This document shows positions 11,700-63,741 of a DNA stretch of 64,000 bases, piece by piece (within the stretch, counting starts at the first letter, position 1; the number at the start of each line of letters is the position of its first letter). The notes below the pieces were generated by a model. The model was given only the letters and a program-made list of their open reading frames with translations. It was not told the DNA's origin and ran no database searches. A program made the position numbers and the translations under genes. The stretch lies in the IMG/VR virus record IMGVR_UViG_3300032331_003609, positions 1 to 64,000 of that record; one strand, written 5' to 3'.

Positions 11700-12671
11700 A
11701 TGAAAATTCTAATCACAGGGGGAGCTGGTTATTTAGGCTCTGTTATCACTGGAAAAATGCTAAACGCGGGGCACGAAGTTGTCGTTTTAGATAAATTGAT
11801 ATTCAATCAAACATCTCTGCTGGTTTACACCTCAAACCCTAATTTTAGATTCATTCACGGAGATGTTAGGAATGAGTCATTATTTGAAAGACTTTGCAAC
11901 GAGGCTGATGCAATTATTCCATTAGCTGCAATTGTAGGATTTCCTGCTTGCGATGCTGAACCTGAATTAGCCGAGGAAATTAACTTTAACCAAATATCCA
12001 ATATTGTTAGATTTACCAAGGATAAAGGTAAAAAAATATTATACCCTAATACTAATAGCGGATACGGCATCGGTGTGGGACAAACAGAATGTACAGAGGA
12101 ATCCCCATTAAACCCTATATCGATTTACGGTAAAACAAAATGCCATGCTGAAGATTTATTAAAATCAAGTACCGATGCTATCATTTTTAGATTAGCAACG
12201 GTATTTGGAGTTTCTCCAAGAATGAGAACTGATTTATTAGTTAACGATTTCACGTACAAGGCTATTACTGACAAATACATTGTGGTTTTTGAGAAGAACT
12301 TTAAAAGAAATTTTATTCATATCCAAGACGTTGCAAACGTGTTCTTGTTTATGTTAGAAAATTATGAGAAATATAAAGGCGAGATTTATAATGTTGGATT
12401 GACTACTGCAAATCTAAGCAAACAAGAATTGCTTGAAAAAATACAAAATCACGTTAAGAACTTTGCTGTTTCGTATAATGACTATTATGAGGATCCAGAT
12501 AAAAGAGATTATATAGTATCAAATGCAAAAATTGAATCAACTGGCTGGTCTCCCGAGTGGGATATAGATAGAGGAATAAAAGAATTGATAATGGGTTACC
12601 AGATGATTGTACCAAAAATGGGCGCAGAATTCCGAAATGGCTTTCCATTGGGATACGCAAATAATATGTAG
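11700..12671 (+). CDS. NAD-dependent NDP-sugar epimerase/dehydratase (extended SDR)
   Basis: TGGAGYLGS Rossmann motif, YGKTK catalytic YxxxK, RLATVFG, RNFIHIQD. Confidence 0.9.
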   Translation: MKILITGGAGYLGSVITGKMLNAGHEVVVLDKLIFNQTSLLVYTSNPNFRFIHGDVRNESLFERLCNEADAIIPLAAIVGFPACDAEPELAEEINFNQISNIVRFTKDKGKKILYPNTNSGYGIGVGQTECTEESPLNPISIYGKTKCHAEDLLKSSTDAIIFRLATVFGVSPRMRTDLLVNDFTYKAITDKYIVVFEKNFKRNFIHIQDVANVFLFMLENYEKYKGEIYNVGLTTANLSKQELLEKIQNHVKNFAVSYNDYYEDPDKRDYIVSNAKIESTGWSPEWDIDRGIKELIMGYQMIVPKMGAEFRNGFPLGYANNM

Positions 12672-17227: not shown

Positions 17228-18907
17228 ATGTACATACTAGGTATATCAGCTTATTACCATGACTCTGCTGCGTGTCTATTCAGAAACGGAACTCTGATCG
17301 GTGCAGCTGAGGAAGAAAGATTTACTGGAATAAAGGGAGACAAAGCATTTCCAAATAAAACAATAGATTGGCTTTTGAGCTCCAATGGAATTAACATCTC
17401 TGACGTATCAACAGTTTGCTGGTATGAAAATCCGGATCTAAAGAGGGATAGGGTATTAAAAACATTTAAAAGAAACCCGATTAAAAATTGGAAAAGAATA
17501 ATCAAGCATTTTACGTGGGGTAATTTTCCAAAGCTTTGGAAGATACTCAACGAGGAAATAGGATTTTTTGGAAAAATTCACGTTGTCGATCATCATCTAT
17601 CTCATGCATCCCTTGCATATTTCACATCATATTTTGAAGAATGTAATATAGTAACCGTAGACGGCGTAGGAGAACATGAGACAATTACAATATCTAAGGC
17701 TTCCCAAAATAAAATAACCAAATTAGCATCAATAAATTATCCACATTCATTGGGTCTATTCTACTCTGCATTCACAGCATACCTTGGATTTAAACCCAAT
17801 GAGGGGGAATACAAGCTTATGGGCCTAGCAGCATACGGGGACCCTGACATATACAGAGAAAGAATTAAAAAAACAATAGCATTTAAAGAAGGCGAATTAT
17901 ATGTTGATATGAAATATTTTTCATGGGATTATTCTGATGAGATAATGTTCAATGAAAATCTTTGCGAGCTTTTAGAAATCCCGCCAAGAATTAGTACAGA
18001 CCCTTTAGATGATCAATATAAGCACATAGCGGCTGCCGTTCAGAAGATCTATGAAGAAATATTGTTTGATGTATTAAACCACAGCTACGAGCTTAATAGG
18101 AGCAGTAATCTTTGTTTAGGTGGGGGATGTGCTTATAACGGAGTAGCTAATGCTGGTATTCAAAAAAATACACCTTACAAAAAGATTTGGATACCGCTTT
18201 CCCCCTCTGATAGCGGATCAGCTATAGGTGCCTGCCTCCATTACATTAATATCAAAAAAGGGCAAAAAAGAAAAGGTGCATTCGAAGCATATCAGGGTCC
18301 ATCTTTTGGAATTAATGAAATAAGATCTGCTCTTTTGAAATATGGTAACAAAGTAGATTGGGAACACATGGAAACCTCAGCTCTTATAAAAAAATCTGCC
18401 AATCTTCTGAACAATGGAAATGTCTTTGGTTGGTTCCAGGGAAAAATGGAATTTGGTGCTAGAGCATTGGGAAACAGATCTATATTGGCTTCTCCTATAT
18501 TTCCAGGTATGCAAGATAGAATAAATTCTGTTATTAAGAAGAGAGAACTTTTTAGACCATTTGCACCATCCGTTTCTTTTGACAAAGCAAATCTTTATTT
18601 CGATATAGATTCGCCCGTCCCGTATATGAATATGGTGGTTAAAGTTAAACCCGGGTGGAATCTGCCTGCTATAACACACGTAGATGGTACTGCAAGGGTA
18701 CAGACTGTTACATCATTCGAAAATCCAAGATATCACAGATTACTAAAAGAAATGGAAGAATTATCAGGGTATCCAATATTATTAAATACCTCTTTTAATT
18801 TTAAGGATCAGACCATTACCCTTTATCCCGAGGATGCAATTATAAGATTTTTAGATTCAGAAATGGACTACTTAGTCTTGGGTAATTTCTTCGTTTCCAA
18901 AAAATAG
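17228..18907 (+). CDS. carbamoyltransferase, NodU/CmcH/TobZ family
   Basis: HDSAA, EEERF, HHLSHA, DGVGE, GEYKLMGLAAYG, GGCAYNG, EFGARALGNRSIL, RPFAPS, HVDGTARVQTV and LNTSFN motifs. Confidence 0.95.
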   Translation: MYILGISAYYHDSAACLFRNGTLIGAAEEERFTGIKGDKAFPNKTIDWLLSSNGINISDVSTVCWYENPDLKRDRVLKTFKRNPIKNWKRIIKHFTWGNFPKLWKILNEEIGFFGKIHVVDHHLSHASLAYFTSYFEECNIVTVDGVGEHETITISKASQNKITKLASINYPHSLGLFYSAFTAYLGFKPNEGEYKLMGLAAYGDPDIYRERIKKTIAFKEGELYVDMKYFSWDYSDEIMFNENLCELLEIPPRISTDPLDDQYKHIAAAVQKIYEEILFDVLNHSYELNRSSNLCLGGGCAYNGVANAGIQKNTPYKKIWIPLSPSDSGSAIGACLHYINIKKGQKRKGAFEAYQGPSFGINEIRSALLKYGNKVDWEHMETSALIKKSANLLNNGNVFGWFQGKMEFGARALGNRSILASPIFPGMQDRINSVIKKRELFRPFAPSVSFDKANLYFDIDSPVPYMNMVVKVKPGWNLPAITHVDGTARVQTVTSFENPRYHRLLKEMEELSGYPILLNTSFNFKDQTITLYPEDAIIRFLDSEMDYLVLGNFFVSKK

Positions 18908-26489: not shown

Positions 26490-29069
26490 ATGAAGAAATT
26501 ACTAACAGTTTTATTATTATTGGTATCTTTTTTGGGGTTTGGACAGGGCGTATCTGCACCAGACCCTAAATCATTTACTGCTAGTACTAGCGGTCAAGAT
26601 GCTAGCGGATTTGAATTAACAGGATTTAGTGCAACATCAACTTTACTTACATCAATCAGTTTAGTTAATCCACCTTCCGGTACAACATTCTCTTTAGGAA
26701 CAATAACAGGTTTAACTGCTGCAAGTGGATTTACTTTAACGGGTAATAAAACTCGTTTAGTAGTAACTGGAACAATGGCTAGTATCAATACGGCATTAGC
26801 ATCATTAAAGATAAACACAGGAACAATAACGGGAGATATTAATATTTCAGTAGCAGCAACTGTAAACCCAACGGGATATTATTTTAATGGTGTAAACGGA
26901 CACTTTTATAAACCCGTATCAACCGGAGCATATTACACAGTAGCTAGAGATGCAGCATTAGCAACAACATTCAAAGGACAGAAGGGATATTTGGTAACAA
27001 TTACTTCTGCAGATGAAGATGCATTTATTTATAATAATGTACCTCAATCAAATATTTGGTTTGCATTAACCGATGAAGTAAGTGAAGCTAGATGGATAAT
27101 AGATGCTGGACCTGAAAAAGGAACTCTGATTAAAATAAATAACGGACAAACAAACGGAAACATTCCTGGTCAATATAACAACTGGGCAGGTGGTGAACCA
27201 AACAATAGTGGTAACGAAGATTATGCAGTAACTAAATGGGGTGGTGGTACTCAATGGAATGATTTACCAAATAACTTTAGTTGTGCTTATGTGATTGAAT
27301 ATGGAACTTGGAGTAATCCTGATGATGCAACATTTACTGAATTTTACACCAATTCAGTTGCACATTCAAACGGGGAAACTATTAAGGCACTATTTGGATT
27401 TAAGTTTAATAGTTCAATTGATAAAACAAAATTTTTAGCACAAATATTCAAAAGAAATGATTCATATTCAAGCTGGACAGCAGCTGATGGTTATAAATCA
27501 TTAAGCGGATTAGGTAAGGTGTATCTTTCAAATCAAATAGACACCTCAAAAGTTTTCTCGTCGGGTATTCCGTTATCAGGAGTAAGCGATATGACACAAT
27601 TTACTACTGCCGATATTGGTAAGATTTATAGAATAACTATAACCGGTGCAAATGGCGGCGGGTGGGGAACTGACATTTATACAAATGACTCGAATATTCC
27701 AGGTATGGCGGTTCATGCAGGTATTGTGGCAATCGGACAAACAAAAGAAGTTTATATTAAAGTAGTTGAGGGCCAAACAAATTATCCGGGCACAACTCGG
27801 AATGGTATATCAACATCTGATTGGGGAGGCTGGGATTTGAGTTATCAATTTGTATCTGCCCCAACATCATACAAAGCAACGGCATCACCCGGACAAGTTG
27901 AATGGTGTGCAATTAGTAAAAATTTAAACAACGGTAAAACTAGAATTCTAATTGACATGAGACAGATAGGAACTCTGGATCCTACTAAAATATCTAATTT
28001 AAAATTATTAGATGTTTATGACGGAGTGATATCTTATGTTTCCAATGACGCAACATGGGGACAATATGATATACCTTATGATATTAGTACTAAAATATTA
28101 ACATCAGCATATCCTAATAATTTTAGAGGATATAGCGGATACTACGGGGTTAGTATTGATTTTGCATTCACACAACAAGGTGCATTCAAACAGCACAAAA
28201 TGGAATTACAAGAGTATGATGCAACCCAATTAAAAGCTTTATATAATAGTATCGTAACTGTGTCCGATGTTTATTTAGCATTTAAGGAGTTAGCAAACGG
28301 TGGAATATTTGGAAATCAAACAGGTAATGAATTCACATACGGTATTCAATATAAAAACTCGGATGTTAACGAAGATGGTGTATTCAACGAGGCGGATTGT
28401 TTTGCACTATTACAAAACTTAACAGGAGCAAAAGATCTAGTAACATCATACACGTTAGATAATACTGTTAGATTGATTCCTGATTCAATTTATAATTTGA
28501 TTGGTAAATCTACTTGGAGTTCATTTCAAGATTTTAGAGGAAAGACATATAATTTTAGCTTAATGGATAACGTGTTAAGCTATAACTATGATCTGGCGGT
28601 TAGTTGGAAAGGCGATGTTAACCTGTCACATTCTGCAACACCTCCATCGAATAACGTAACAACAATGTCAATCAGAACAGCAAGTGCTGCGATACTAAAT
28701 GAAATGAGCGCTGCTATTATGACTGAAGTAATTGGAGATAGCGTTTATGCTTATATTACTATCGATCCTTTACAGCAAAATGTAGTTGGAACACAATTTC
28801 AACTAAATTATGATAATTCAATGTTAAAATTCAATAATGTAACATTTAAAACTAAAGGTTCACCTATGAACTATGGCAATGATAAAGGTTCATATATTAA
28901 TTTAGGATCTTTAATTAGTGATGGAACAACATCTTTAGATAACACAACAGAGTATAAAATATCATTTACAGCAAAAAGTAAATTGGATAACGTATTTGGT
29001 TTAATCTCTATCGGAACAACCGATGCAGTAAATAAATCTGGGATACAATTAAAAGTTAAATTAAACTAA
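26490..29069 (+). CDS. exported multidomain adhesin: C-type lectin + LCCL + dockerin + cohesin
   Basis: WAGGEPNNSGNEDY...WNDLP (C-type lectin); WGTDIYTNDSNIPGMAVHAG...RNGISTSDWG (LCCL); DVNEDGVFNEAD (dockerin); VVGTQFQLNYDNSML (cohesin). Confidence 0.8.
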   Translation: MKKLLTVLLLLVSFLGFGQGVSAPDPKSFTASTSGQDASGFELTGFSATSTLLTSISLVNPPSGTTFSLGTITGLTAASGFTLTGNKTRLVVTGTMASINTALASLKINTGTITGDINISVAATVNPTGYYFNGVNGHFYKPVSTGAYYTVARDAALATTFKGQKGYLVTITSADEDAFIYNNVPQSNIWFALTDEVSEARWIIDAGPEKGTLIKINNGQTNGNIPGQYNNWAGGEPNNSGNEDYAVTKWGGGTQWNDLPNNFSCAYVIEYGTWSNPDDATFTEFYTNSVAHSNGETIKALFGFKFNSSIDKTKFLAQIFKRNDSYSSWTAADGYKSLSGLGKVYLSNQIDTSKVFSSGIPLSGVSDMTQFTTADIGKIYRITITGANGGGWGTDIYTNDSNIPGMAVHAGIVAIGQTKEVYIKVVEGQTNYPGTTRNGISTSDWGGWDLSYQFVSAPTSYKATASPGQVEWCAISKNLNNGKTRILIDMRQIGTLDPTKISNLKLLDVYDGVISYVSNDATWGQYDIPYDISTKILTSAYPNNFRGYSGYYGVSIDFAFTQQGAFKQHKMELQEYDATQLKALYNSIVTVSDVYLAFKELANGGIFGNQTGNEFTYGIQYKNSDVNEDGVFNEADCFALLQNLTGAKDLVTSYTLDNTVRLIPDSIYNLIGKSTWSSFQDFRGKTYNFSLMDNVLSYNYDLAVSWKGDVNLSHSATPPSNNVTTMSIRTASAAILNEMSAAIMTEVIGDSVYAYITIDPLQQNVVGTQFQLNYDNSMLKFNNVTFKTKGSPMNYGNDKGSYINLGSLISDGTTSLDNTTEYKISFTAKSKLDNVFGLISIGTTDAVNKSGIQLKVKLN

Positions 29070-41873: not shown

Positions 41874-42602
41874 ATGTCCAAGAAAAAAGTCTGCATAATC
41901 ATACCTGCTAGATTGGGTAGTTCTAGATTTCCTAATAAACCTTTGGTTGATATAGGAGGTAGGAGCATGATACAAAGGGTATATGAAAGATGTAAGGAAT
42001 CATATGCTAACGAAGTAATAGTATCAACGGAAGATCAATTAATATACGATCATGTAAAGAAATTTGGTAAATGCGATTTGACCCCAAAATTTGAAAACGG
42101 AACACTAAGAGTTTGCCACACAGCTTCTTCTTTAATTAACGAATTCAGCCACATCATAAACGTACAAGGCGATGAGCCATTCATAGATCTTGCATTTCTC
42201 AATAGATTTATTAGGGATCTTTCCGACATAACACCAGGAAACGTATTGACAGGTGCTGAGGATAATTCTATATTATCTGAGGCTCAAAGAAAAAATCCAA
42301 ATGCCGTTAAATTTATTTCTGCAAAAGATAAATTTATTTCAGGATTTACCCGAAGTCCATTCTTTGTACATGTAAGCGGAATCTATAAGCACATCGGGGT
42401 ATATGGATTTTGCTCTGAGGATATAGAATCTATATCATTAATGGAGACAACAGAATTATCAAAAAGAGATTCTTTAGAGCAGATAACATGGATGGAAAGA
42501 GGCTTTAATATTAAGTATACTGTCTCTTATAATAAATCCATATCTATAGATACACCAGAGGATTTAAGCTTAGCTACGAGCATCTTTTTATCCAATAAGT
42601 AA
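41874..42602 (+). CDS. kdsB: 3-deoxy-manno-octulosonate cytidylyltransferase (CMP-Kdo synthetase)
   Basis: IPARLGSSRFPNKPL, NVQGDEPFI, YKHIGVYGF, SLEQITW, SIDTPEDL. Confidence 0.9.
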   Translation: MSKKKVCIIIPARLGSSRFPNKPLVDIGGRSMIQRVYERCKESYANEVIVSTEDQLIYDHVKKFGKCDLTPKFENGTLRVCHTASSLINEFSHIINVQGDEPFIDLAFLNRFIRDLSDITPGNVLTGAEDNSILSEAQRKNPNAVKFISAKDKFISGFTRSPFFVHVSGIYKHIGVYGFCSEDIESISLMETTELSKRDSLEQITWMERGFNIKYTVSYNKSISIDTPEDLSLATSIFLSNK

Positions 42603-44372: not shown

Positions 44373-45128
44373 ATGTTAAACTTAGACCCATTGAGCCAAA
44401 AAGAGATAAATTTTGATAGATTAAAATTGGATCCCAGCGATGGGATTTTAAAAATAACAAAATCCAAAAAATTTAAAGAACTTTCCTATATTGATGTTAA
44501 TCAACACATCGAAGAATCCGTTATTTGGGCAATTAAGAACGAATTTCAGAGTAACGGAAGGACGATTGATAAAGTAATAAGAAATTCAATTATCGGAAAA
44601 CTTGGCGAATTTGTGATCTATCATTTTTTAGATCGTATGGGGTATCTTCCAGCATATCCAGATCTTAGGGTAATAGAAAAAGGAGAGAAGAAGAATGATG
44701 GAGGATACGATCTAAAAATTCTTGATAAGTATTGGATAAATGTAAAAACATCAACCGGTGCATCTAATACGTTGTTATTGAAAAAAGATCATTTCGATTC
44801 TCTAGGAAATTGTGTATATCGAAGGGATCCAAAAGATCCGCCATGTCAATATTTTTTTCTGTGCAGATTAAACCAAGATATCAATAAAATTAAGCTCGAG
44901 AATTGGACCGATGTTGATTACGTTGTTAGTGAATTATCCCAATTGAGATTCGGATGCGACATCCCTGGATTTTTGACGATATCAGATTTCAGAAAAATTA
45001 TCTCAGAGAATATTACAATAGAGTCCGGACAAATGCTAGCAGTCAAAGATTTTAAATTTGATGTTGATACGTATTACTGCCAAGCAGGAAATCTTAGAGA
45101 CATAGAAGAAATTAAAAAACATGATTGA
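44373..45128 (+). CDS. PD-(D/E)xK restriction-endonuclease-like protein
   Basis: GKLGEFVIY, DGGYDL, INVKT. Confidence 0.55.
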   Translation: MLNLDPLSQKEINFDRLKLDPSDGILKITKSKKFKELSYIDVNQHIEESVIWAIKNEFQSNGRTIDKVIRNSIIGKLGEFVIYHFLDRMGYLPAYPDLRVIEKGEKKNDGGYDLKILDKYWINVKTSTGASNTLLLKKDHFDSLGNCVYRRDPKDPPCQYFFLCRLNQDINKIKLENWTDVDYVVSELSQLRFGCDIPGFLTISDFRKIISENITIESGQMLAVKDFKFDVDTYYCQAGNLRDIEEIKKHD

Positions 45129-45825
45129 TATAGTAATACTTAGTTGTTCTGCAAATGATGAATTAAAAAAGCAAACCACCGATTGTCTCGATTCATTATT
45201 CTCCTCAGAAGAGAACTCTGAAGATTTATTTAATGTTATAATACTAGAATCTGATGATTTTGTTAATTGGGATTCATACCCAAATACAAAAACATATAAA
45301 TCTCCTGAACCTTATGGATACCATAAATACATGAACTATGGCAGAAAACTTGGCAACAACGAATACGTCTGCTTATGTAATAACGATCTGATATTTTATA
45401 AAGGATGGGCTTCACACATTCTAGAATTATCCAAAGAGCATTCAGAAATACTTTCATTTTCCCCAATTTGTCCAAGAACACAACCGATGTATGGGATTGG
45501 TTTAAATACTCAGAACTATATTGGATATGAGGTAAGGAAACATATTTCGGGATGGTGCATTTTTCAGAAGAGAAAAATATATGATATTATTGGGGATCTT
45601 GACGAGAGATTTACTCATTGGTTTTCTGATAATGATTATGCTTTAACGCTATACACAAAAAATATATTACACTGTTTAGTTACTCATTCTATAGTAGAGC
45701 ATCATGACAAGAATGTAGGAAAAACCGGACCGGCAGTTTTGAATGAAGATGAGATGTACAGCATGACCAACGGAAGCCAAGATATTTTCACCCAAAAATG
45801 GGATTCATACTTTCCCAATAAATAA
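45121..45825 (+). CDS. glycosyltransferase family 2
   Basis: IDIVILS, CLCNNDLIF (DxD-like), ISGWCIF, DERFTHWFSDND. Confidence 0.8.
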   Translation: MIDIVILSCSANDELKKQTTDCLDSLFSSEENSEDLFNVIILESDDFVNWDSYPNTKTYKSPEPYGYHKYMNYGRKLGNNEYVCLCNNDLIFYKGWASHILELSKEHSEILSFSPICPRTQPMYGIGLNTQNYIGYEVRKHISGWCIFQKRKIYDIIGDLDERFTHWFSDNDYALTLYTKNILHCLVTHSIVEHHDKNVGKTGPAVLNEDEMYSMTNGSQDIFTQKWDSYFPNK

Positions 45826-45893
45826 TTCAATTTTTCCCCCATTTATTGAAAATCTAAAGGGATTTTGATCTATAGTATTTAATATAGATTTTG

Positions 45894-46382
45894 ATGTTTA
45901 AGATATCCTTTAGAATCTCCCCGTTCCAAGAATTTAATATTGGATCCCTGGTTACGTATCGGGACGAAAATCTAGTGGACTATATAAAGGATACACTTTA
46001 TTCCCGATCAAATTTCTTCTATATAGAGTCAGTTAATTGGGATAAGTATGAATGTAAGATTTCAAACGGCATAGATTCTGTATTATCCACACCTGATCAA
46101 TTAATAGAGGTAGTTTCTTATATTGAAAAAATCGATGACTCTGGAATAAAATCTATGCATTTTTCAGGGAATACCGTGGAAAATGTTGCTAAGTGGCAAA
46201 ATGATTTTGATAATAGAGAATCATATATTTTAGAGAACCAAAGAATTGCAATTTTTTTAGAAAATGTATCAATTCCCAGGAATTATTTCTCATTAGAAAG
46301 CAGGATAATTAATATCAATTCTGCGATTAAAAATTATACAGTAGCAAGATTTGACGATGAAGCGATTCAGGATCTTCTCTGA
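45894..46382 (+). CDS. hypothetical protein
   Basis: ORF. Confidence 0.55.
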   Translation: MFKISFRISPFQEFNIGSLVTYRDENLVDYIKDTLYSRSNFFYIESVNWDKYECKISNGIDSVLSTPDQLIEVVSYIEKIDDSGIKSMHFSGNTVENVAKWQNDFDNRESYILENQRIAIFLENVSIPRNYFSLESRIININSAIKNYTVARFDDEAIQDLL

Positions 46383-46410
46383 GATAGATACTGATATAAA
46401 ATTTAGAAAA

Positions 46411-46710
46411 ATGACAGAATTAAAAAGCGAGAATTTTGAGAGTGCTGTTTCTTCAGCAAAGAAATGTTTGATTGATTTCTATGCAACATGGTGCGGTCCA
46501 TGTAAAGCAATGAATCCGGTTTTAGAAAGTGTAGAAAATGAATTGGGTATTGAGGTTATTTACAAAATTGATGTTGATAAAAATAGAGATCTAGTTGAAA
46601 AATACGGAATTAGATCTGTTCCGACTTTTCTATTCTTTGAAGATGGGATTGAAAAAGAAAGAAAGAGTGGGGTAATTCCTAAAAACTATTTAATAGAATC
46701 ATTATCATAA
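46411..46710 (+). CDS. trxA: thioredoxin
   Basis: DFYATWCGPCK, YGIRSVPTFLFF. Confidence 0.95.
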   Translation: MTELKSENFESAVSSAKKCLIDFYATWCGPCKAMNPVLESVENELGIEVIYKIDVDKNRDLVEKYGIRSVPTFLFFEDGIEKERKSGVIPKNYLIESLS

Positions 46711-46784
46711 TACAGAAGATCCGGAATAATTTTTATAAAACATTTTTATTTTCGGGGAAACTATTCTATATTTGCATATATAAA

Positions 46785-47238
46785 CATCTAAACAAAAAAG
46801 TTCTTTAAAATATTGGTTGTTAAAGTTGAAGCGGCAGAATTTGGTACATCAAAAATCAATTATGCAAGGAAACAGTTTGGTCTCGTATCAAATTTATCCA
46901 AACACTATCTTACCCGTTCTAATAGGGTAGATGCATCGGACGCCAAGCGACTGGTGAAAAATTTAGATATTCTGAAAAGAAATTCAGGGCGGCTGACCGG
47001 CCTTAAGGGTTAGAGAATCGTTCACTTAATGGACAACCCCAAATCTGGGGATTCTCAGCGAACAACAACTAATTAATAAAATACTATCCGATGCGGGATA
47101 GGGAGTTACATCAAGGCAAACGAAAAAAAAACTCCCTTTCAATATTCTCGGTAAGTTATTTCTAAAATGCAATTCACAAATTTGTGTTTGTTTATAATAT
47201 AGGAAGAAGCTTATCGTCAATCGGTAGGCTTTTTTTTT
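46785..47238 (+). ncRNA. structured Y-RNA-like locus upstream of Ro60
   Basis: Own promoter elements (TATATTTG 46767, CATATATAAA 46775) and terminator. Two units GA(A/T)GCGG-N10-TACATC at 46828 and 47090, whose N10 pairs downstream, flank a multi-stem central domain closed by GCATCGGA/TCCGATGC. Confidence 0.6.
47207..47238 (+). terminator. intrinsic terminator between the RNA locus and the TROVE gene
   Basis: AAGCTTATCG/CGGTAGGCTT 10-bp stem (GU pairs) plus T-run. Confidence 0.7.
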
Positions 47239-47260
47239 GTCAAAAATTAAAAACAAACAT

Positions 47261-48898
47261 ATGAGCAAGTTATCAGAATACGCAGTTAAATCCAAATCAG
47301 AAACTAGAAAATACGAGGACCTAGTGGTAGAGAATTTTATGGGGGGTAATTCCTATAAACTTTCTCCCTTGCAAACTCTTAAAATAGTGGCTGCTAGTTC
47401 TATCTTCGGTGAGCCTCAGTATTATAAGAATGGCATAAAATCTGAGGCATCTATCAAGAATCATGATACACTATTGGAATATTCTATATTTTCAGATCTT
47501 ATTAAGGATTCTACCTCTGCTGCAGATGTTTTTACGAACGCTATTGACTCATCCTTAGATTATGACTTCAAGGGAACTTTAGACTTAGCTACGGAGCTAA
47601 GAATGCTGTTTTTGATGAGGTTAAACCCTGCTGTCATTTTCATACGAGCTTCAATTCATTCAAAAAGAGCTGAATTCAATGAATCTAATCCAGGTTACAT
47701 GAAAACTGTCGGTAAATCGATAGCTCTTAGACCAGATGATCTGACAAATCAATTTGAGTATTTCATGTATGTGAATAAGACTAAAAACAAATTGAGCTCA
47801 ATCGTTAAAAGAACATGGGCAGAAAGACTTGGAGAATATTCAAAATATCAACTGAACAAATATAAAGGAAAGAGTCTAATTGATCTTGTTAGGATTTCAC
47901 ACGCTTGGAATAATAACATAGATGAGTTAATGAAGACCGGATCTATTAAGGTTGAGGAATCGGAAAGAACCTGGGAGAATTTAAAATCCAGCGGAAAGAA
48001 CTGGAAAGAAATCCTAGAGACTATCGAAATTCCGCACATGGCACTTTTAAGAAATCTAAGAGGTATTTTTAAAGAGATCGAAGATTTAGAAATTGCTAAA
48101 TCAGTCATGGAAAAATTATCTGCTGGTGTTTCTAAAGGAAATCAATTCCCTTTTAGATATTGGTCAGCATACAAAGCGGTAGAGAAAGAAGATGAGATCA
48201 ATCATAAAGGAATTATCTTAGATGGACTAGAATCTTGTATGGACATCTCAGTTTTAAATATGCCAAAGCTTGTTGGGAAAACCATATGCCTTTCTGATAA
48301 TTCAGGATCTTCTTGGGGACAATTGGCTTCCGAATACGGAAGTGTTCACGCAGCAGAGATAGCAAACCTTTCTTCCCTAATTACAGGTAAGCAGTCAGAC
48401 GAAGGTGAAATAGGATTATTCGGAGACAAACTTATCGTTGAATCAGTTTCTAAAAGAAACGGTTTACTTTCCCAATTAAAGGCAGTTAATGCGGTAGAAA
48501 GAGATGATAGTAGATTAGGTGGAAGTACAGAAAATGGTATTTGGATTTTCTTTGATCAAGCAATTAAAGAGAAAAAGCATTACGATAACATTTTCATATA
48601 TTCAGACATGCAAGCTGGGCATGGAGGTTTATATGGTAGCGACCCTAGCGAATATGAGGATTTCGTGCACAGCAAAGGAGGATGGAGATACATTGACGTT
48701 CTAGCTCTTGTTTCTAAATATAGAAAAGAGGTGAATCCGAAAGTTAATATTTTTTCAGTTCAGGTTGCAGGGTATGATAATACAGTATTACCAGAAAATA
48801 TTTATAGAGGAGCGATTTTAGCTGGATGGACAGGAAAAGAACCAGTTTTTGCTAAGGCATTAATCGATACCTGGAATGAAATAGAATCTACCAAATAG
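47261..48898 (+). CDS. rsr: Ro60 / TROVE-vWA RNA-binding protein
   Basis: NFMGGNSY, SIFGEPQYY, KYQLNKY, LIDLVRISHA, PHMALLRNLR, PFRYWSAY, and vWA SDNSGSS and IYSDMQ. Confidence 0.9.
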   Translation: MSKLSEYAVKSKSETRKYEDLVVENFMGGNSYKLSPLQTLKIVAASSIFGEPQYYKNGIKSEASIKNHDTLLEYSIFSDLIKDSTSAADVFTNAIDSSLDYDFKGTLDLATELRMLFLMRLNPAVIFIRASIHSKRAEFNESNPGYMKTVGKSIALRPDDLTNQFEYFMYVNKTKNKLSSIVKRTWAERLGEYSKYQLNKYKGKSLIDLVRISHAWNNNIDELMKTGSIKVEESERTWENLKSSGKNWKEILETIEIPHMALLRNLRGIFKEIEDLEIAKSVMEKLSAGVSKGNQFPFRYWSAYKAVEKEDEINHKGIILDGLESCMDISVLNMPKLVGKTICLSDNSGSSWGQLASEYGSVHAAEIANLSSLITGKQSDEGEIGLFGDKLIVESVSKRNGLLSQLKAVNAVERDDSRLGGSTENGIWIFFDQAIKEKKHYDNIFIYSDMQAGHGGLYGSDPSEYEDFVHSKGGWRYIDVLALVSKYRKEVNPKVNIFSVQVAGYDNTVLPENIYRGAILAGWTGKEPVFAKALIDTWNEIESTK

Positions 48899-48922
48899 AG
48901 CTTATTTCCTGATATATAAAAC

Positions 48923-49585
48923 ATGAAACACCTGAATCCGTTTGAATCTTTACTTACAGGATCGCCAGCAAAACAATCGAAATTTACAGATCCAAGGGAC
49001 GGTAAAGTATATCGGACTGTTACCATAGAGGATACTGAATGGTTTTTAGATAACCTAGATTATGATGACACTGATGATTTTGGAGGTAATTCTGCTTTGG
49101 AGATTTTTTTCACGAAGGAAGAATTACCATCGATCAAAGAAGATACTAATAGGAACACCTGCGGTAGATACTATAGATTCAATTCATTAGATAATGCATG
49201 TCCAGACGGATGGGAGATTCCAAAAAGAGAAGATTTTATAAATCTTTTTAAAAAGATCACAGGGAAAAATCCACACGAGTGGAGAGATTCCGAAAGGGGA
49301 GAGATATTCAGATCACTCTGTGGATTTAGATCTATCCTAGAATTGGAAATGTGTGGAAGCTATGAAAAACCACGTTTCGTGGGGACCTCATCACTTGCTG
49401 GCGACAGATTTAATTCTAATGGATTTAATTTTACTAGCAACAAAGATGGATATTATTGGTCAAGTACCCCAGGTTCTCTAAATAACGGAGGTGCAGTTTT
49501 TATATTCGGAGGGGAAGAAAAAAAGTATTTAGAGGATGTTGGCTATGGATATTATCAGGTTAGACCAATAAGAAAAAATATATAG
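48923..49585 (+). CDS. FISUMP (Fib_succ_major) domain protein with MKHLNPFES tag
   Basis: FTDPRDGKVYRTVTI...WFLDNL...GRYY...ACPDGWEIP...GYYWSST...VRPI; no signal peptide. Confidence 0.8.
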   Translation: MKHLNPFESLLTGSPAKQSKFTDPRDGKVYRTVTIEDTEWFLDNLDYDDTDDFGGNSALEIFFTKEELPSIKEDTNRNTCGRYYRFNSLDNACPDGWEIPKREDFINLFKKITGKNPHEWRDSERGEIFRSLCGFRSILELEMCGSYEKPRFVGTSSLAGDRFNSNGFNFTSNKDGYYWSSTPGSLNNGGAVFIFGGEEKKYLEDVGYGYYQVRPIRKNI

Positions 49586-57498: not shown

Positions 57499-58722
57499 CT
57501 ATATTAAAGATTTTTGTTTTTGTTTGATTCCTTTATTTATTATGTCGTAGGAGAATTTACCAAATGTAATACTAGCTTCATCTGCAAATATATCGGCTAG
57601 ATCTTTTTTTGGTTTAAAATTATACGAAGAATCTATTATTAAATCTAAAGGATGTGGCAAATCCCCTGCTAAATCATTCACTTTTTTCCAAAAATTGGTA
57701 TCTGTTCTATTTGTCAAATAATGATAATAAATAAAAATCATATTTTGTGTATTGATAGAATTAACAAATTTATTATATTTTTCTAAAGTAATTTTTTTGG
57801 AAATAACCTCATTGAATACTTCTAGTTGTAAAATTACAGTCATTATTGAAGTGGCCTCTAATGGCTCTAAAAATCCGGTGCTTAATCCTATTGCCAAGCA
57901 ATTTTCAATCCATACATTTTCGTATGATCCTGGTTTAAATTTAATTTGTCTATTAAATTCAACAGAATGTCCTACCCATTCTATTATTTCTTTTTTGGCA
58001 TCATCTTCAGTAATTTCAGTTGAGTCAAATATGTAGCCACACCCCATTCTTGTCTGGAGTGGTATCTGCCACATCCATCCATGTTTCATAGCGATAGATT
58101 TGGTTGTTGTTTTTATGTCAGTAATCTTGTTTGGTAAAAAAAACGGAATTGCGGTATTTACTTTTAAATGAGATTCGTACGAAATCCAATTTGATTTATA
58201 ATGATTACCGATTAATAATCTTTTAAAACCGGAGCAATCAATAACAAATGATGCATCAATCGTTGAATCTGTTGTCTTAAGCCCAATAATTCTGTTTTCG
58301 TCACTTGCTACTGTTTCGGTTACAATACCTTCGATCCAATTAACCCCCCGTTCGATCGATAAGGATTTAAGGTATTTTGCTAATAATCTAGCATTAAAAT
58401 GGTACGCATATCCTTGGCCTTTTACTTTATAATCAATCGGATGATGATACGCAAGATTAGGCTCTGTCCAATTTTCAAAATCAATACCTGTTTTAAATGT
58501 TGCCTCGCAATTTTTGATCATATCATCAGATGTGATCCCTAGCTCATTTAAAAATTTTACAATATTACCAGTAGTTCCTTCACCCGCACCCAATATTCCG
58601 ATCTCATCACTTTCGATTAATGTTATTTTTGAATTTTTAAATTTACTATTTAAATACAACGCTGACAACCATCCTGCTGTACCCCCGCCAACTATAACAA
58701 TATTATCTAAATTATATTTCAT
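57499..58722 (-). CDS. tryptophan halogenase-like flavin-dependent enzyme (PrnA family)
   Basis: GGGTAGW, GAGEGT, ATFKTGIDF, YHFNA, IDCSGF, GWMWQIPL, GLSTGFLEPLEATSI. Confidence 0.9.
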   Translation of the reverse strand: MKYNLDNIVIVGGGTAGWLSALYLNSKFKNSKITLIESDEIGILGAGEGTTGNIVKFLNELGITSDDMIKNCEATFKTGIDFENWTEPNLAYHHPIDYKVKGQGYAYHFNARLLAKYLKSLSIERGVNWIEGIVTETVASDENRIIGLKTTDSTIDASFVIDCSGFKRLLIGNHYKSNWISYESHLKVNTAIPFFLPNKITDIKTTTKSIAMKHGWMWQIPLQTRMGCGYIFDSTEITEDDAKKEIIEWVGHSVEFNRQIKFKPGSYENVWIENCLAIGLSTGFLEPLEATSIMTVILQLEVFNEVISKKITLEKYNKFVNSINTQNMIFIYYHYLTNRTDTNFWKKVNDLAGDLPHPLDLIIDSSYNFKPKKDLADIFADEASITFGKFSYDIINKGIKQKQKSLI

Positions 58723-62514: not shown

Positions 62515-63741
62515 ATGGTCTGGAATTACAAAGACACATTGCTAGTTCACGTTGAGCTTTCTAATATGTGTAATGCTGCTTGTCCGCTTTGTCCAAGATA
62601 CGTGAATAACTCATTAAGAGTCAATCCCGAGCTTGATTTGGGTAGTGTTTCATTAGAAGATTTTAAAAAATGGTTCCCCTTAGATTTTGTTCAGAAAAGT
62701 AAAAGCTGGATATTTTGCGGAACCAATGGTGATCCTATAATGGCAAGGGATGTTTACGAAATACTGGAATATGTACTTCGCAATTCGGAAGCGAAGGTTC
62801 AGGTAAACACTAACGGATCCATCAGAGATGGGGAATTTTGGGAAAAAATGGGAGCATTATTTGCAGAACCCTGTGTCAATAGTAGATACGTTGTTTTTTC
62901 AGTCGATGGATTGGAAGACACAAATCACATCTATAGAAGAAACGTCAAATGGGATAGGGTGATGGAAAATATGGGAGCATATTCCAAATCGGGTTCTACC
63001 GGAATTTGGGATTTTTTAATATTTAAACACAACGAACATCAGTTAGATGAGGCAGAGGCACTTTGTAAAAAAATAGGATTAGCGTTTTCTCCAAAAAGAC
63101 CTTTCGGGTTTGAGACAGGAAACCCAGATGAATATCAGGATCTAATGGTTTATGATTTAGATGGCAATTTTTTATACAGGATAGAACCTGCTAGCGAAGA
63201 GTGGAGATTAAACAGATCCCTCAATAAATTTCAAAAAGGGGAAGAAAAAATATGGGTTCCCGGGAAGGAGAAAAAAAGTAAGGATCAGACAGAAGAAAAA
63301 TGGAACGGATTAATAGAAAGAGATCTTCCTAAATATCAATTTCCAGAAAGATTCAAGGGAAAATCTGTTAGCTGTAAATCATGCCATCCTATAGGAAAGG
63401 AAATATACGTTGACTGTAAGGGTAATGTTATGCCTTGCTGTTTTGTAGGAACAATGTACAATAGTGATTTTCAACACCACGAAGCATTGCAGATCAAAAA
63501 GCACTTACAAGATTGGGGGTTAGATAAAATAAATTTAAACAACCATTCTCTTGAAGAAATATTAGACAGCAAGTATTTAGACGATGTATTTGCAAATAGA
63601 TGGGATGGTGCTAAAAAGGATGAGGATAAAATGGGATATTGTTTCAATACATGTTCGGTTGATCATATGAAAGACCTTTTCGTTAGAAAGGAGGAATTAC
63701 CTATATCCCCGGAAAAACACGAGATAAAAAGTCTTATATAG
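62515..63741 (+). CDS. radical SAM protein with SPASM/twitch domain
   Basis: CNAACPLC (CxxxCxxC), GTNGDP, SVDGL; C-terminal C...IYVDCKGNVMPCC...CFNTC. Confidence 0.9.
   Translation: MVWNYKDTLLVHVELSNMCNAACPLCPRYVNNSLRVNPELDLGSVSLEDFKKWFPLDFVQKSKSWIFCGTNGDPIMARDVYEILEYVLRNSEAKVQVNTNGSIRDGEFWEKMGALFAEPCVNSRYVVFSVDGLEDTNHIYRRNVKWDRVMENMGAYSKSGSTGIWDFLIFKHNEHQLDEAEALCKKIGLAFSPKRPFGFETGNPDEYQDLMVYDLDGNFLYRIEPASEEWRLNRSLNKFQKGEEKIWVPGKEKKSKDQTEEKWNGLIERDLPKYQFPERFKGKSVSCKSCHPIGKEIYVDCKGNVMPCCFVGTMYNSDFQHHEALQIKKHLQDWGLDKINLNNHSLEEILDSKYLDDVFANRWDGAKKDEDKMGYCFNTCSVDHMKDLFVRKEELPISPEKHEIKSLI

What the first reader, a model, noticed from the sequence alone, without database searches (positions are those of the whole stretch)
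46767..48898. Phage Ro60 with its own ~450-nt multi-domain Y-RNA-like locus and an intervening terminator
Seen: between trxA and the TROVE gene lies a transcription unit with overlapping host-type and late-type promoter motifs and a terminator at 47207-47238. It holds two equal-length units, GAAGCGG-CAGAATTTGG-TACATC (46828) and GATGCGG-GATAGGGAGT-TACATC (47090). In each, the variable 10-mer pairs with a downstream segment (ATCAAATTT; ACTCCCTTTC), so sequence differs while pairing is kept. Between them is a GC-rich domain closed by GCATCGGA/TCCGATGC, with several hairpins and a three-way junction (GAGAAT..CCCC/GGGGATTCTC). An alternative hairpin CTATCC/GGATAG overlaps the closing stem. Established: bacterial Ro60 (Rsr) genes sit beside Y RNAs (YrlA/B), and some phages carry them. 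Inference: these are Y RNAs, but I see no GTTCGA T-loop, so they may be a non-tRNA-mimic class or a single long scaffold RNA. Ro60 could also autoregulate read-through of the terminator.
Basis: partly seen in the sequence, partly recalled or inferred. Interest (0 to 1): 0.8.

Follow-up and report, generated by a model that had tools for sequence, protein, structure and literature searches.

The report
Phage Ro60 gene with Y-like RNAs
A giant freshwater phage carries, just upstream of its Ro60-type RNA-binding gene, two structured non-coding RNAs built on one conserved stem-and-loop module; the family is widespread, expressed in lakes, lacks the tRNA-like part of bacterial Y RNAs, and its larger RNA may be circular.

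Summary
The two repeated units, the terminator and the Ro60-type gene are real. The 550-nt gap between trxA and that gene holds a conserved structured RNA locus. Its homologues lie upstream of the Ro60 gene in essentially every related locus with enough flanking DNA (about 90 freshwater phage contigs, Bacillus phage G, gut and rumen MAGs).

The conserved architecture is one module used twice. It runs: closing helix, 5' loop GA(N)GCGG, 9-bp covarying helix P2, UUACUUCA, apical insert, P2 return strand, AAUAUUCUC, closing helix. Module 1 (46804-47073) encloses a ~190-nt multi-hairpin domain. Module 2 (47083-47156) has an A-rich loop.

In phage G the same module encloses an Rfam YrlA tRNA-like domain, which ties the module to Y RNAs. 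The window's RNAs match no Rfam family and have no tRNA-like domain.

Contigs from four lake metatranscriptomes cover about 46808-47072 at 4-27x, while the flanking genes are near zero. Two of them carry head-to-tail joints, which fit a circular RNA, a reverse-transcription artefact or a DNA duplication.

In related phages, stand-alone modules sit flush between tRNA genes.

Verdict: tandem, processed Y-RNA-like partners of a phage Ro60, a new variant of a known kind. Binding to Ro60 is inferred, not shown.

The parts
46411..46710 (+). Thioredoxin gene (trxA), the upstream neighbour. Context only.
   Evidence: Pfam Thioredoxin E 1.3e-27.
46767..46774 (+). TATATTTG, a Bacteroidota-type -7 promoter box (TAnnTTTG). 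Probable promoter of the RNA locus.
   Evidence: Read from the sequence. A TAnnTTTG box lies 17-26 nt before the leader motif in 39 of 74 unique homologous loci. Promoter function is inferred.
46799..46808 (+). Conserved leader motif (A/C)GUUCUUUAA. The observed 5' ends of the accumulated RNA fall inside or just after it.
   Evidence: Present in 63 of 74 unique loci. RNA-contig ends and joints fall at 46804, 46808 and 46812. Its role is unknown.
46804..47073 (+). Large Y-like RNA (module 1): the species that accumulates, about 262-270 nt.
   Evidence: Contigs from 4 metatranscriptome runs cover about 46808-47072 at depth 3.7-26.8, with flanking genes near 0. At least 8 RNA runs from at least 7 studies hold 60% or more of its sampled words.
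46813..46821 (+). P0 5' strand, the outer closing helix. Pairs with 47064-47072 (9 bp).
   Evidence: RNAfold. Duplex predictions show long closing helices of different sequence in all lineages.
46825..46829 (+). P1 5' strand. Pairs with 47055-47059.
   Evidence: Anchored pair counts are 98-100% paired at offsets -1 to 3, against 0-81% in shifted registers. Second-ranked helix in the covariation scan.
46828..46834 (+). GAAGCGG, the invariant 5' loop motif of module 1 and candidate Ro60 contact. Resembles the Y RNA motif GNCGAAN0-1G.
   Evidence: Conserved in 209 unique module copies. The motif comparison is with Chen 2014 (PMC4201824).
46835..46844 (+). P2 5' strand of module 1. Pairs with 47039-47047 (9 bp, one bulged A).
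   Evidence: Top-scoring covarying helix in the scan of 47 large modules. P2 is complementary at 9 of 9 positions in most loci.
46845..46851 (+). UACAUCA, the window's version of the invariant UUACUUCA motif at the top of P2.
46852..47038 (+). Apical domain of module 1 (187 nt). Local hairpins: 46874-46881/46887-46894; 46907-46915/46925-46932; 46934-46942/46948-46956; 46970-46976/46983-46989 (loop AAGAAA); 46993-46997/47009-47013; 47020-47024/47030-47034 (loop CUUAA).
   Evidence: RNAalifold on 12 sequences: 20 of 44 pairs show double changes. Coordinates. The CNUAA hairpin covaries across all lineages. No Rfam match.
47039..47047 (+). P2 3' strand of module 1.
47048..47054 (+). GGGAUUC, the 3' loop of module 1. 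The family consensus AAUAUUCUC spans 47048-47056, and its last UC (47055-47056) opens the P1 3' strand.
47055..47072 (+). P1 3' strand (47055-47059) and P0 3' strand (47064-47072). The RNA 3' end is at 47072/47073.
47083..47156 (+). Small Y-like RNA (module 2). Outer helix 47083-47085/47154-47156; P1 47088-47091/47148-47151; loop UGCGG 47092-47096; P2 47097-47105/47132-47140; ACAUCA plus an A-rich apical loop; 3' loop AAUAUUC 47141-47147.
   Evidence: Covariance model R1: 74.2 bits, E 1.8e-17. Covariation on 66 modules: 84% paired, score 0.56 against 0.23 in shuffles, 0 of 500 shuffles as high.
47209..47238 (+). Intrinsic terminator: an 8-bp stem with two G-U pairs, a 5-nt loop and a 9-U tract.
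   Evidence: Homologues keep a GC-rich hairpin plus U tract with different stem sequences.
47261..48898 (+). Ro60-type gene: TROVE ring plus vWA domain with a DxSxS MIDAS motif.
   Evidence: Pfam TROVE E 2.4e-6. PHROG 850 E 4e-40. phmmer to phage phiLo Ro60 (9KOP) E 1.7e-13. AF2 model pLDDT 77.6, pTM 0.80. The top 13 Foldseek hits are all Ro60/Rsr structures.

Best explanation
The trxA-Ro60 gap is a small RNA operon. A host-type promoter (about 46767) drives one transcript that ends at the terminator (47238). The transcript is cut into at least one stable RNA of about 265 nt (module 1, 46804-47073) and probably a second of about 75-80 nt (module 2, 47083-47156).

Each RNA has the build of a Y RNA. 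Its 5' and 3' ends pair in a long stem. The stem is interrupted by an invariant asymmetric internal loop: AGCGG on the 5' side, AAUAUUC on the 3' side, plus UUACUUCA above helix P2. Beyond that comes a variable apical part.

Inferred: the invariant loop is the docking site for the phage's Ro60-type protein. The apical part (a ~190-nt multi-hairpin domain in module 1, an A-rich loop in module 2) then gates Ro60 or tethers it to another factor such as a host exoribonuclease, as shown for bacterial Rsr-Y RNA-PNPase and for Thermus phage phiLo Ro60-Yrl-PNPase.

Shown here: conservation, covariation, synteny, the Ro60 fold of the protein, the YrlA link in phage G, and accumulation of the module-1 RNA in lake metatranscriptomes.

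Inferred only: Ro60 binding, the effector, the processing enzymes and the promoter.
For: 1. The protein is Ro60-like.
2. The RNA is conserved on the same strand upstream of the gene in essentially all loci with enough flank. That covers 84 of 92 non-redundant loci by regular expression; the rest are truncated contigs or are picked up by the covariance model.
3. All 122 + 28 model hits in 0.9 Mb (both strands searched) lie upstream of the Ro60 gene on its strand.
4. The helices covary: small module, large module P1, P2 and the CNUAA hairpin, closing helices, apical hairpins.
5. In Bacillus phage G (Ro60 48% identical) six copies of the same module lie 5' of gp540 (five in the adjacent 1-kb gap). 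One encloses an Rfam YrlA tRNA-like domain (36 bits, E 1e-5) exactly in its apical insert.
6. The 5' motif YGAAGCGG resembles the Ro60-site motif GNCGAAN0-1G of bacterial Y RNAs and the CGAA motif of the phiLo Yrl RNAs.
7. RNA-library contigs cover about 46808-47072 in 4 of 4 runs, with flanking genes near zero. At least 8 runs from at least 7 studies hold the RNA.
8. Single modules sit flush between tRNA genes in the arrays of related phages, so a module is a free-standing small RNA gene.
Against: - No binding data exist. The link to Ro60 rests on synteny and analogy.
- The loci were fetched through the Ro60 gene, so 'Ro60 always has the RNA' was tested better than 'the RNA always has Ro60'.
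- The one RNA-first search found copies in tRNA arrays. Four of those contigs also hold the Ro60 gene, but for three others its presence was not established.
- The loop motif matches the published Ro60 motif only partly: the first G is not conserved and there is no bulged-C helix.
- Model R1 found nothing in Thermus phage phiLo or in a Desulfovibrio phage with more distant Ro60 genes.
- Module 2 is covered by only one low-depth RNA contig. Small RNAs are poorly captured in such libraries.
- Logan contigs show presence, not strand or exact ends.
Confidence: 0.7

Rival explanations
1. The whole ~450-nt transcript, with both modules, works as one long scaffold RNA that binds two Ro60 rings.
For: One promoter-like box and one terminator flank both modules. 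The order large module then small module is kept in 56 of 92 loci, and 23 more add a third. One low-depth RNA contig spans 47047-47266 and so links the end of module 1 to module 2.
Against: Three of four RNA runs give contigs that stop at about 46808 and 47072/47073, and two join those ends head to tail. The linker between the modules is A/U-rich and not conserved. Module number varies from 1 to 6. Single modules stand alone between tRNAs.
Confidence: 0.12
2. The RNA is a cis-acting leader or attenuator of the Ro60 mRNA. Ro60 or another ligand binds the modules and controls read-through of the terminator at 47209-47238.
For: The Ro60 start codon lies 22 nt after the terminator U tract with no room for a separate promoter. 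In most loci the gap from the last module to the gene is 71-128 nt. One RNA contig crosses the terminator into the start codon.
Against: In at least 16 non-redundant loci the RNA lies 0.5-2 kb from the Ro60 gene, with ORFs in between. Modules occur inside tRNA arrays far from the gene. The upstream RNA accumulates far above the mRNA. No alternative anti-terminator pairing is conserved. A secondary autoregulatory role is not excluded.
Confidence: 0.07
3. The modules are structured small RNAs of the phage tRNA system, for example decoys or substrates for tRNA-processing or tRNA-cleaving enzymes. Their partner is not Ro60, and the neighbourhood with the Ro60 gene is only shared regulation.
For: Modules sit flush between tRNA genes. 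Ro60 loci in L003, L014, L064, L152 and phage G adjoin tRNA arrays. Module 2 is about the size of a tRNA.
Against: The window holds the RNA and Ro60 but no tRNA in 64 kb. The tie to the Ro60 gene holds from 43% to 100% protein identity and across habitats. The phage G YrlA-type copy uses the same stem, and in YrlA RNAs the stem is the Ro60 site.
Confidence: 0.1
4. It is not an RNA gene at all: a small protein gene (the 66-aa ORF at 46813-47013) or DNA-level repeats such as protein-binding sites.
For: An ORF of 66 aa with a TTG start overlaps module 1. Two similar DNA units are present.
Against: The ORF is absent from the 84%-identity relative. Variation is compensatory in helices, and indels are not in threes. 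The region is selectively present in RNA libraries. All copies lie on one strand.
Confidence: 0.01

Closest known systems
Bacterial YrlA/YrlB Y RNAs (Rfam RF02553; Chen et al. 2014, PMC4201824)
   Same: They are encoded beside a Ro60 orthologue, on its strand and often in tandem. The 5' and 3' ends form a long stem with a conserved purine-rich 5' motif (GNCGAAN0-1G there, YGAAGCGG here), and a separate apical domain follows. In phage G the same stem module encloses a YrlA tRNA-like domain.
   Different: The window's RNAs have no tRNA-like T or D arms and no Rfam hit at E<=10. The stem carries a different invariant loop set (AGCGG, UUACUUCA, AAUAUUC). Module 1, at about 265 nt, is two to three times the usual 80-130 nt.
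Thermus phage phiLo Ro60 with Yrl1 and Yrl2 (Hu et al. 2025, PMC12135203; PDB 9KOP, 9L5Y)
   Same: It is the closest solved protein (E 1.7e-13; TM 0.64/0.73). Two Y-like RNAs lie directly upstream of the phage Ro60 gene, and a CGAA-type motif is needed for binding. That work shows Ro60-Yrl-host PNPase complexes that damp PNPase.
   Different: Protein identity is only about 22-26%. Model R1 finds no module in the phiLo locus. The Yrl RNAs were defined by single-sequence folding, whereas this family has covariation support and a much larger apical domain.
Bacillus phage G gp540 locus
   Same: It is the closest cultured relative (48% identity over the full length). It carries six copies of the same module 5' of the gene, five of them in the adjacent gap.
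   Different: It has six modules instead of two, and one of them has a YrlA tRNA-like insert. It lacks the ~190-nt domain of the window's module 1 (nhmmer found no match). Its host is a Bacillus rather than, presumably, a freshwater Bacteroidota.
Metazoan Y RNAs and Deinococcus Yrn1
   Same: The overall plan is the same: a terminal stem with the Ro60 site plus a large loop or domain that binds or tethers other factors. Several Y RNAs occur per genome.
   Different: There is no GGUCCGA bulged-C helix, the size differs and there is no sequence similarity. A possible circular form has not been reported for Y RNAs in the papers searched.

Membership tests
Ro60 / TROVE protein family (for the gene at 47261-48898) | TROVE (HEAT-repeat ring) domain | tested here: met
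   Pfam PF05731 at 27.4 bits against a cutoff of 23. Foldseek top 13 hits are all Ro60/Rsr structures (E 1.5e-14 to 1.9e-9), with TM 0.49-0.64 normalised by the query and 0.50-0.73 by the target.
Ro60 / TROVE protein family (for the gene at 47261-48898) | C-terminal vWA domain with a MIDAS motif | tested here: met
   The model shows an alpha/beta domain from residue 337. A DNSGS (DxSxS) motif is visible in the alignment to 9KOP. vWA structures are the next Foldseek hits.
Y RNA (broad sense: Ro60-bound ncRNA) | Encoded near a Ro60 orthologue on the same strand | tested here: met
Y RNA (broad sense: Ro60-bound ncRNA) | The 5' and 3' ends form a long stem with a conserved site, plus a large loop or domain | tested here: met
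   P0, P1 and P2 carry an invariant internal loop. Covariation. RNA ends lie at the base of P0.
Y RNA (broad sense: Ro60-bound ncRNA) | Physically bound by Ro60 | not testable with these tools
   Needs EMSA or RIP. Only analogy to phiLo and to YrlA is available.
Y RNA (broad sense: Ro60-bound ncRNA) | Ro60-site sequence motif (GGUCCGA bulged helix, or GNCGAAN0-1G) | tested here: inconclusive
   YGAAGCGG shares the (C/U)GAAG core. The leading G is not conserved and no bulged C is present.
YrlA subfamily (Rfam RF02553) | tRNA-like domain with T and D arms | tested here: not met
   No YrlA or tRNA hit in window 46650-47320 at E<=10, none at gathering score in the whole window, and ARAGORN finds no tRNA. 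Positive control: a phage G module gives YrlA at 36 bits.
Cis-regulatory leader / attenuator | Constant position immediately 5' of the regulated gene | tested here: not met
   In at least 16 loci the RNA lies 0.5-2 kb away. Copies also occur inside tRNA arrays.
Rho-independent terminator (47209-47238) | GC-rich hairpin followed by a U tract, conserved in place | tested here: met
   The simple scan did not list it.

The most novel reading that the evidence does not exclude
The large Y-like RNA (46804-47073) exists in infected cells largely as a covalently closed circle. After excision its two ends, held together by closing helix P0, would be ligated by a host or phage RNA ligase. This would give an exonuclease-proof Ro60 partner and the first circular Y RNA. 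The basis is two independent metatranscriptome contigs with head-to-tail joints: 47073->46804, in a 300-nt contig that equals a 270-nt circle plus a 30-nt overlap, as a circular sequence assembled from 31-letter words (my assumption about the assembler) would give; and 47072->46812. Alternatives are reverse-transcriptase template switching on an abundant RNA, or tandem DNA duplication in variant strains.
Probability: 0.3. Interest if true: 0.8.

Novelty: new variant of a known kind. Interest (0 to 1): 0.62.

Why it matters
Ro60-Y RNA particles are known from animals, bacteria and a few phages. Outside the tRNA-like YrlA class, bacterial and phage Y RNAs are hard to find.

This work defines a compact stem-loop module with covariation support. 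The module marks Y-like RNAs for a whole clade of phage Ro60 proteins (43-100% identity) in lakes, rumen and gut, and in cultured Bacillus phage G.

The module can carry very different cargo: a tRNA-like domain, an A-rich loop, or a ~190-nt multi-hairpin domain. That makes the modular 'Ro60 handle plus effector domain' idea directly testable.

The RNA is abundant in lake metatranscriptomes, so it is a major product of infection. The module's presence as a unit inside tRNA arrays links Ro60 biology to phage tRNA processing.

If the head-to-tail joints reflect true circles, this would be a new way to stabilise a Y RNA. Phage G offers a laboratory system for all of these tests.

Tried and rejected
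1. Known RNA families: none found at gathering score in the window or at E<=10 in the region (only terminator-like noise). The same holds for a majority-lineage locus.
2. DNA similarity to deposited phage genomes: none.
3. A GAAG/CUUC pseudoknot between the two invariant motifs: the variable positions are independent (Fisher p = 1.0, n = 209).
5. The alternative register GAA/UUC from RNAalifold: rejected, because A47091-type positions covary with the U of CUC (A-U 61, G-C 4).
6. Whole-RNA alignments from hmmalign or MAFFT gave poor consensus folds. My first filter for the majority lineage failed and was redone.
7. A tRNA-like domain in larger modules of Bacillota MAG loci: none at E<=0.001.
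8. An RtcB or RNA ligase gene in the window: none among 24 ORFs scanned with Pfam. The region holds auxiliary metabolic genes. The other 180 kb of the contig was not examined.
9. A defence-system reading of the protein: PADLOC gave only a chance-level hit. NCBIfam gave nothing.
10. A gene-neighbour analysis is uninformative about Ro60 linkage, because the loci were fetched through that gene.
Full report
WHAT IS THERE

The window is part of a 244.8-kb IMG/VR phage contig. A thioredoxin gene lies at 46411-46710, and a 545-aa TROVE/vWA gene at 47261-48898. The 550-nt gap between them has no conserved ORF.

The protein is a Ro60-type protein:
- Pfam TROVE scores just above its cutoff, and PHROG 850 'RNA-binding protein' gives E 4e-40.
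- The best PDB sequence hits are the Ro60 of Thermus phage phiLo (9KOP and 9L5Y, E 1.7e-13).
- An AlphaFold model (pLDDT 77.6, pTM 0.80) has as its top 13 Foldseek hits only Ro60/Rsr structures: phiLo, Xenopus, human and Deinococcus.

The gap folds more stably than shuffled sequence (z = -4.3). It ends in an intrinsic terminator at 47209-47238. It matches no Rfam family, and the window has no tRNA.

CONSERVATION AND SYNTENY

Relatives of the protein were used to fetch 128 loci from viral and metagenome collections. Iterated nhmmer with the gap sequence then found a homologous RNA region, on the same strand and upstream of the Ro60 gene, in nearly all of them.

After removing duplicates, 84 of 92 loci show at least one module by a simple pattern test. 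The remaining 8 are truncated contigs or are detected by the covariance model. Most loci have two modules (56), many have three (23), and a few have one (5).

In at least 16 loci the RNA lies 0.5-2 kb from the gene, with ORFs in between.

THE REAL ARCHITECTURE

Alignments show one module used repeatedly. It runs: closing helix P1 (extended outward as P0), 5' loop GA(N)GCGG, 9-bp helix P2 of free sequence, invariant UUACUUCA, an apical insert, the P2 return strand, invariant AAUAUUCUC, and the P1 return strand.

In the window, module 1 is laid out as follows:
- P0: 46813-46821 with 47064-47072
- P1: 46825-46829 with 47055-47059
- GAAGCGG: 46828-46834
- P2: 46835-46844 with 47039-47047
- Apical domain: 187 nt

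Module 2 spans 47083-47156, with P1 at 47088-47091/47148-47151 and P2 at 47097-47105/47132-47140.

Covariation supports these helices:
- On 66 small modules, 84% of cells are paired. The covariation score is 0.56 against 0.23 in shuffles (0 of 500 as high) and 0.11-0.18 in slid registers. These sequences had been pre-filtered for complementarity. That inflates the percentage paired but not the many compensatory pair types.
- A pair-by-pair covariation scan over 47 large modules ranks P2, P1 and the CNUAA hairpin as the top three helices.
- Anchored counts without any pairing filter give 98-100% pairing at the first five P1 positions.
- Duplex predictions show long closing stems of unrelated sequence in every lineage.
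- Within the window's lineage, RNAalifold supports six local hairpins in the apical domain, and 20 of 44 pairs show double changes.

Right:
- The two units, their coordinates and their equal length.
- The pairing of unit 2's variable strand.
- The hairpin at 47020-47034, the terminator, and the absence of a T-loop.

Wrong:
- The segment ATCAAATTT forms a local hairpin with 46874-46881. It does not pair with unit 1.
- GCATCGGA sits in a local covarying hairpin. Its proposed partner TCCGATGC is module 2's own P1 plus motif.
- The CCCC/GGGG hairpin and the GAGAAU/AUUCUC junction consume the P2 return strand and the invariant 3' loop.

LINK TO Y RNAs

The closest cultured relative is Bacillus phage G gp540, at 48% identity.
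- Covariance model R1, built from the small modules, finds six modules 5' of gp540. Five lie in the 1-kb gap directly before the gene.
- The sixth, at L129 777-938, has a 98-nt apical insert. That insert is a significant match to the tRNA-like core of Rfam YrlA (RF02553, model positions 23-86, 36 bits, E 1e-5).
- So in this Ro60 clade the module takes the place of the YrlA stem, which in YrlA RNAs is the proposed Ro60 site (PMC4201824).

The 5' motif YGAAGCGG overlaps the published GNCGAAN0-1G motif and the CGAA motif needed for phiLo Ro60 binding (PMC12135203). The resemblance is partial and short.

R1 also hits upstream of Ro60 homologues (43-54% identity) in rumen and gut Bacillota and Synergistota MAG contigs. 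It hits nothing in the phiLo or Desulfovibrio phage loci. In about 0.9 Mb searched on both strands, all 150 hits lie upstream of the gene on its strand.

EXPRESSION AND PROCESSING

Logan contigs from four freshwater metatranscriptome runs were laid on 45800-49000.
- They cover about 46808-47072 at word depths of 26.8, 6.6, 6.0 and 3.7. trxA, the Ro60 gene and the neighbouring genes are at or near zero.
- Three of the four runs give contigs that begin at 46808-46825 and end at 47072/47073. These ends lie at the base of helix P0.
- One run also has a low-depth contig at 47047-47266. It covers module 2 and crosses the terminator.
- At least 8 RNA runs from at least 7 studies hold 60% or more of the sampled words of 46804-47073.

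Contigs show presence, not strand or exact ends, and DNA carry-over is possible. However, uniform DNA would not give this profile.

I conclude that module 1 accumulates as a discrete RNA of about 265-270 nt. The conserved leader motif (A/C)GUUCUUUAA (46799-46808; present in 63 of 74 loci) lies at the 5' processing region. Its role is unknown.

HEAD-TO-TAIL JOINTS

Two of the four runs contain joints 47073->46804 and 47072->46812.
- One contig is 300 nt, which equals a 270-nt circle plus a 30-nt overlap. A circular sequence assembled from 31-letter words (my assumption about the assembler) would give this.
- No repeat in the sequence explains the joint.
- Possible causes are a circular RNA, reverse-transcriptase template switching or concatenation of an abundant RNA, or a tandem DNA duplication in variant strains.
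- The papers returned by my literature search did not describe circular Y RNAs. Only circular-permuted tRNA analogies appear.

MODULES AS FREE-STANDING GENES IN tRNA ARRAYS

An RNA-first pattern search of viral contigs returned 13 places. Seven are second copies away from the Ro60 locus. For four of these the same contig also carries the Ro60 locus.

In these seven places, one ~84-nt module sits on the tRNA strand flush between two tRNA genes. An example is tRNA-Tyr, then the module, then tRNA-Gln in L187.

Several Ro60 loci themselves adjoin tRNA arrays. A module is therefore a self-contained small RNA gene that can be released by tRNA-processing enzymes. This argues against a purely cis-regulatory role.

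MECHANISM

Most likely (confidence 0.7), these are tandem Y-RNA-like partners of the phage Ro60. The invariant internal loop is the Ro60 handle, and the apical part is a lineage-specific effector or gating domain.

By analogy with Rsr-Y RNA-PNPase and with phiLo Ro60-Yrl-PNPase, the particle probably redirects or restrains a host exoribonuclease, or takes part in RNA (tRNA) quality control during infection. Binding, effector and processing enzymes are all inferred.

Rivals, with confidence:
- One 450-nt scaffold: 0.12
- A partner other than Ro60, within the tRNA system: 0.10
- A cis-acting attenuator of the Ro60 gene: 0.07
- Not an RNA gene: 0.01

NOVELTY

Phage Ro60 genes with adjacent Y-like RNAs are known (Chen 2014; Hu 2025).

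New here:
- A defined, covarying stem module specific to a large phage Ro60 clade.
- Its use with a non-tRNA domain of about 190 nt.
- Its tandem and tRNA-array organisation.
- Environmental expression, with a possible circular form.

I rate it a new variant of a known kind, interest 0.62.

HOST

The TAnnTTTG box and the absence of a Shine-Dalgarno sequence suggest a Bacteroidota host. This is inference. The genome collection held no close host match.

Noticed in passing
L187:9974-10057; L185:1441-1524; L182:5133-5216(-); also L177, L178, L180, L186: In related phages a single ~84-nt module lies on the tRNA strand flush between two tRNA genes of a large array (for example tRNA-Tyr, module, tRNA-Gln), away from the Ro60 locus. 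It looks like a tRNA-sized gene released by tRNA processing.
   Followed up: partly
window 46804-47073 (joints 47073->46804 and 47072->46812): Head-to-tail joints of the large RNA occur in contigs of two independent metatranscriptome runs. One contig has the length expected for a circular 270-nt sequence. Circle, RT artefact or DNA duplication is not resolved.
   Followed up: partly
L129:777-938 (Bacillus phage G, between gp538 and gp539): One phage G module encloses an Rfam YrlA tRNA-like domain (36 bits, below the family's gathering score of 69). Five further modules without it fill the 1-kb gap upstream of gp540.
   Followed up: yes
window 46799-46808: The leader motif (A/C)GUUCUUUAA is conserved in 63 of 74 unique loci, including loci where a tRNA gene rather than a promoter lies directly upstream. 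Its function is unknown. In L064 it pairs with a downstream AAAGAAC as part of an extended closing stem.
   Followed up: partly
window 47020-47034 and homologues: A hairpin with pentaloop C-N-U-A-A is conserved with a covarying stem in all lineages of the large module, followed by R-C/G-A-A-Y-C. A second conserved loop (U/A)AGAAAU lies at 46977-46983. No known motif was assigned to either.
   Followed up: no
L003, L014, L064, L152, L129: Ro60 loci of related phages lie next to arrays of 7-11 tRNA genes. In L003, L014 and L064 a tRNA ends directly before the large RNA, so no separate promoter is likely there.
   Followed up: partly
L182:8546-9676(-): A second, very divergent TROVE-like ORF (23% identity to the window protein) lies about 3 kb from a tRNA-array module. 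The contig (that of L015) also has the main Ro60 gene.
   Followed up: no
window 11700-12671, 17228-18907, 41874-42602, 45121-45825, 57499-58722(-), 62515-63741: The window is rich in auxiliary genes: NAD-dependent epimerase, carbamoyltransferase, cytidylyltransferase, glycosyltransferase, tryptophan halogenase and a radical SAM/SPASM enzyme. Large FG-GAP and LCCL/cohesin-domain proteins are also present (6039-7415, 26490-29069).
   Followed up: no
L171:4894-5062: A cobalamin riboswitch lies about 300 nt downstream of the Ro60 homologue in an Erysipelotrichaceae MAG contig. This suggests that the locus sits in a cellular or prophage context.
   Followed up: no
L113:2304-2936: In this locus about 300 nt are inserted between the large module and two small modules. 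L033 and L035 have the order small module then large module, so module order is not absolutely fixed.
   Followed up: no
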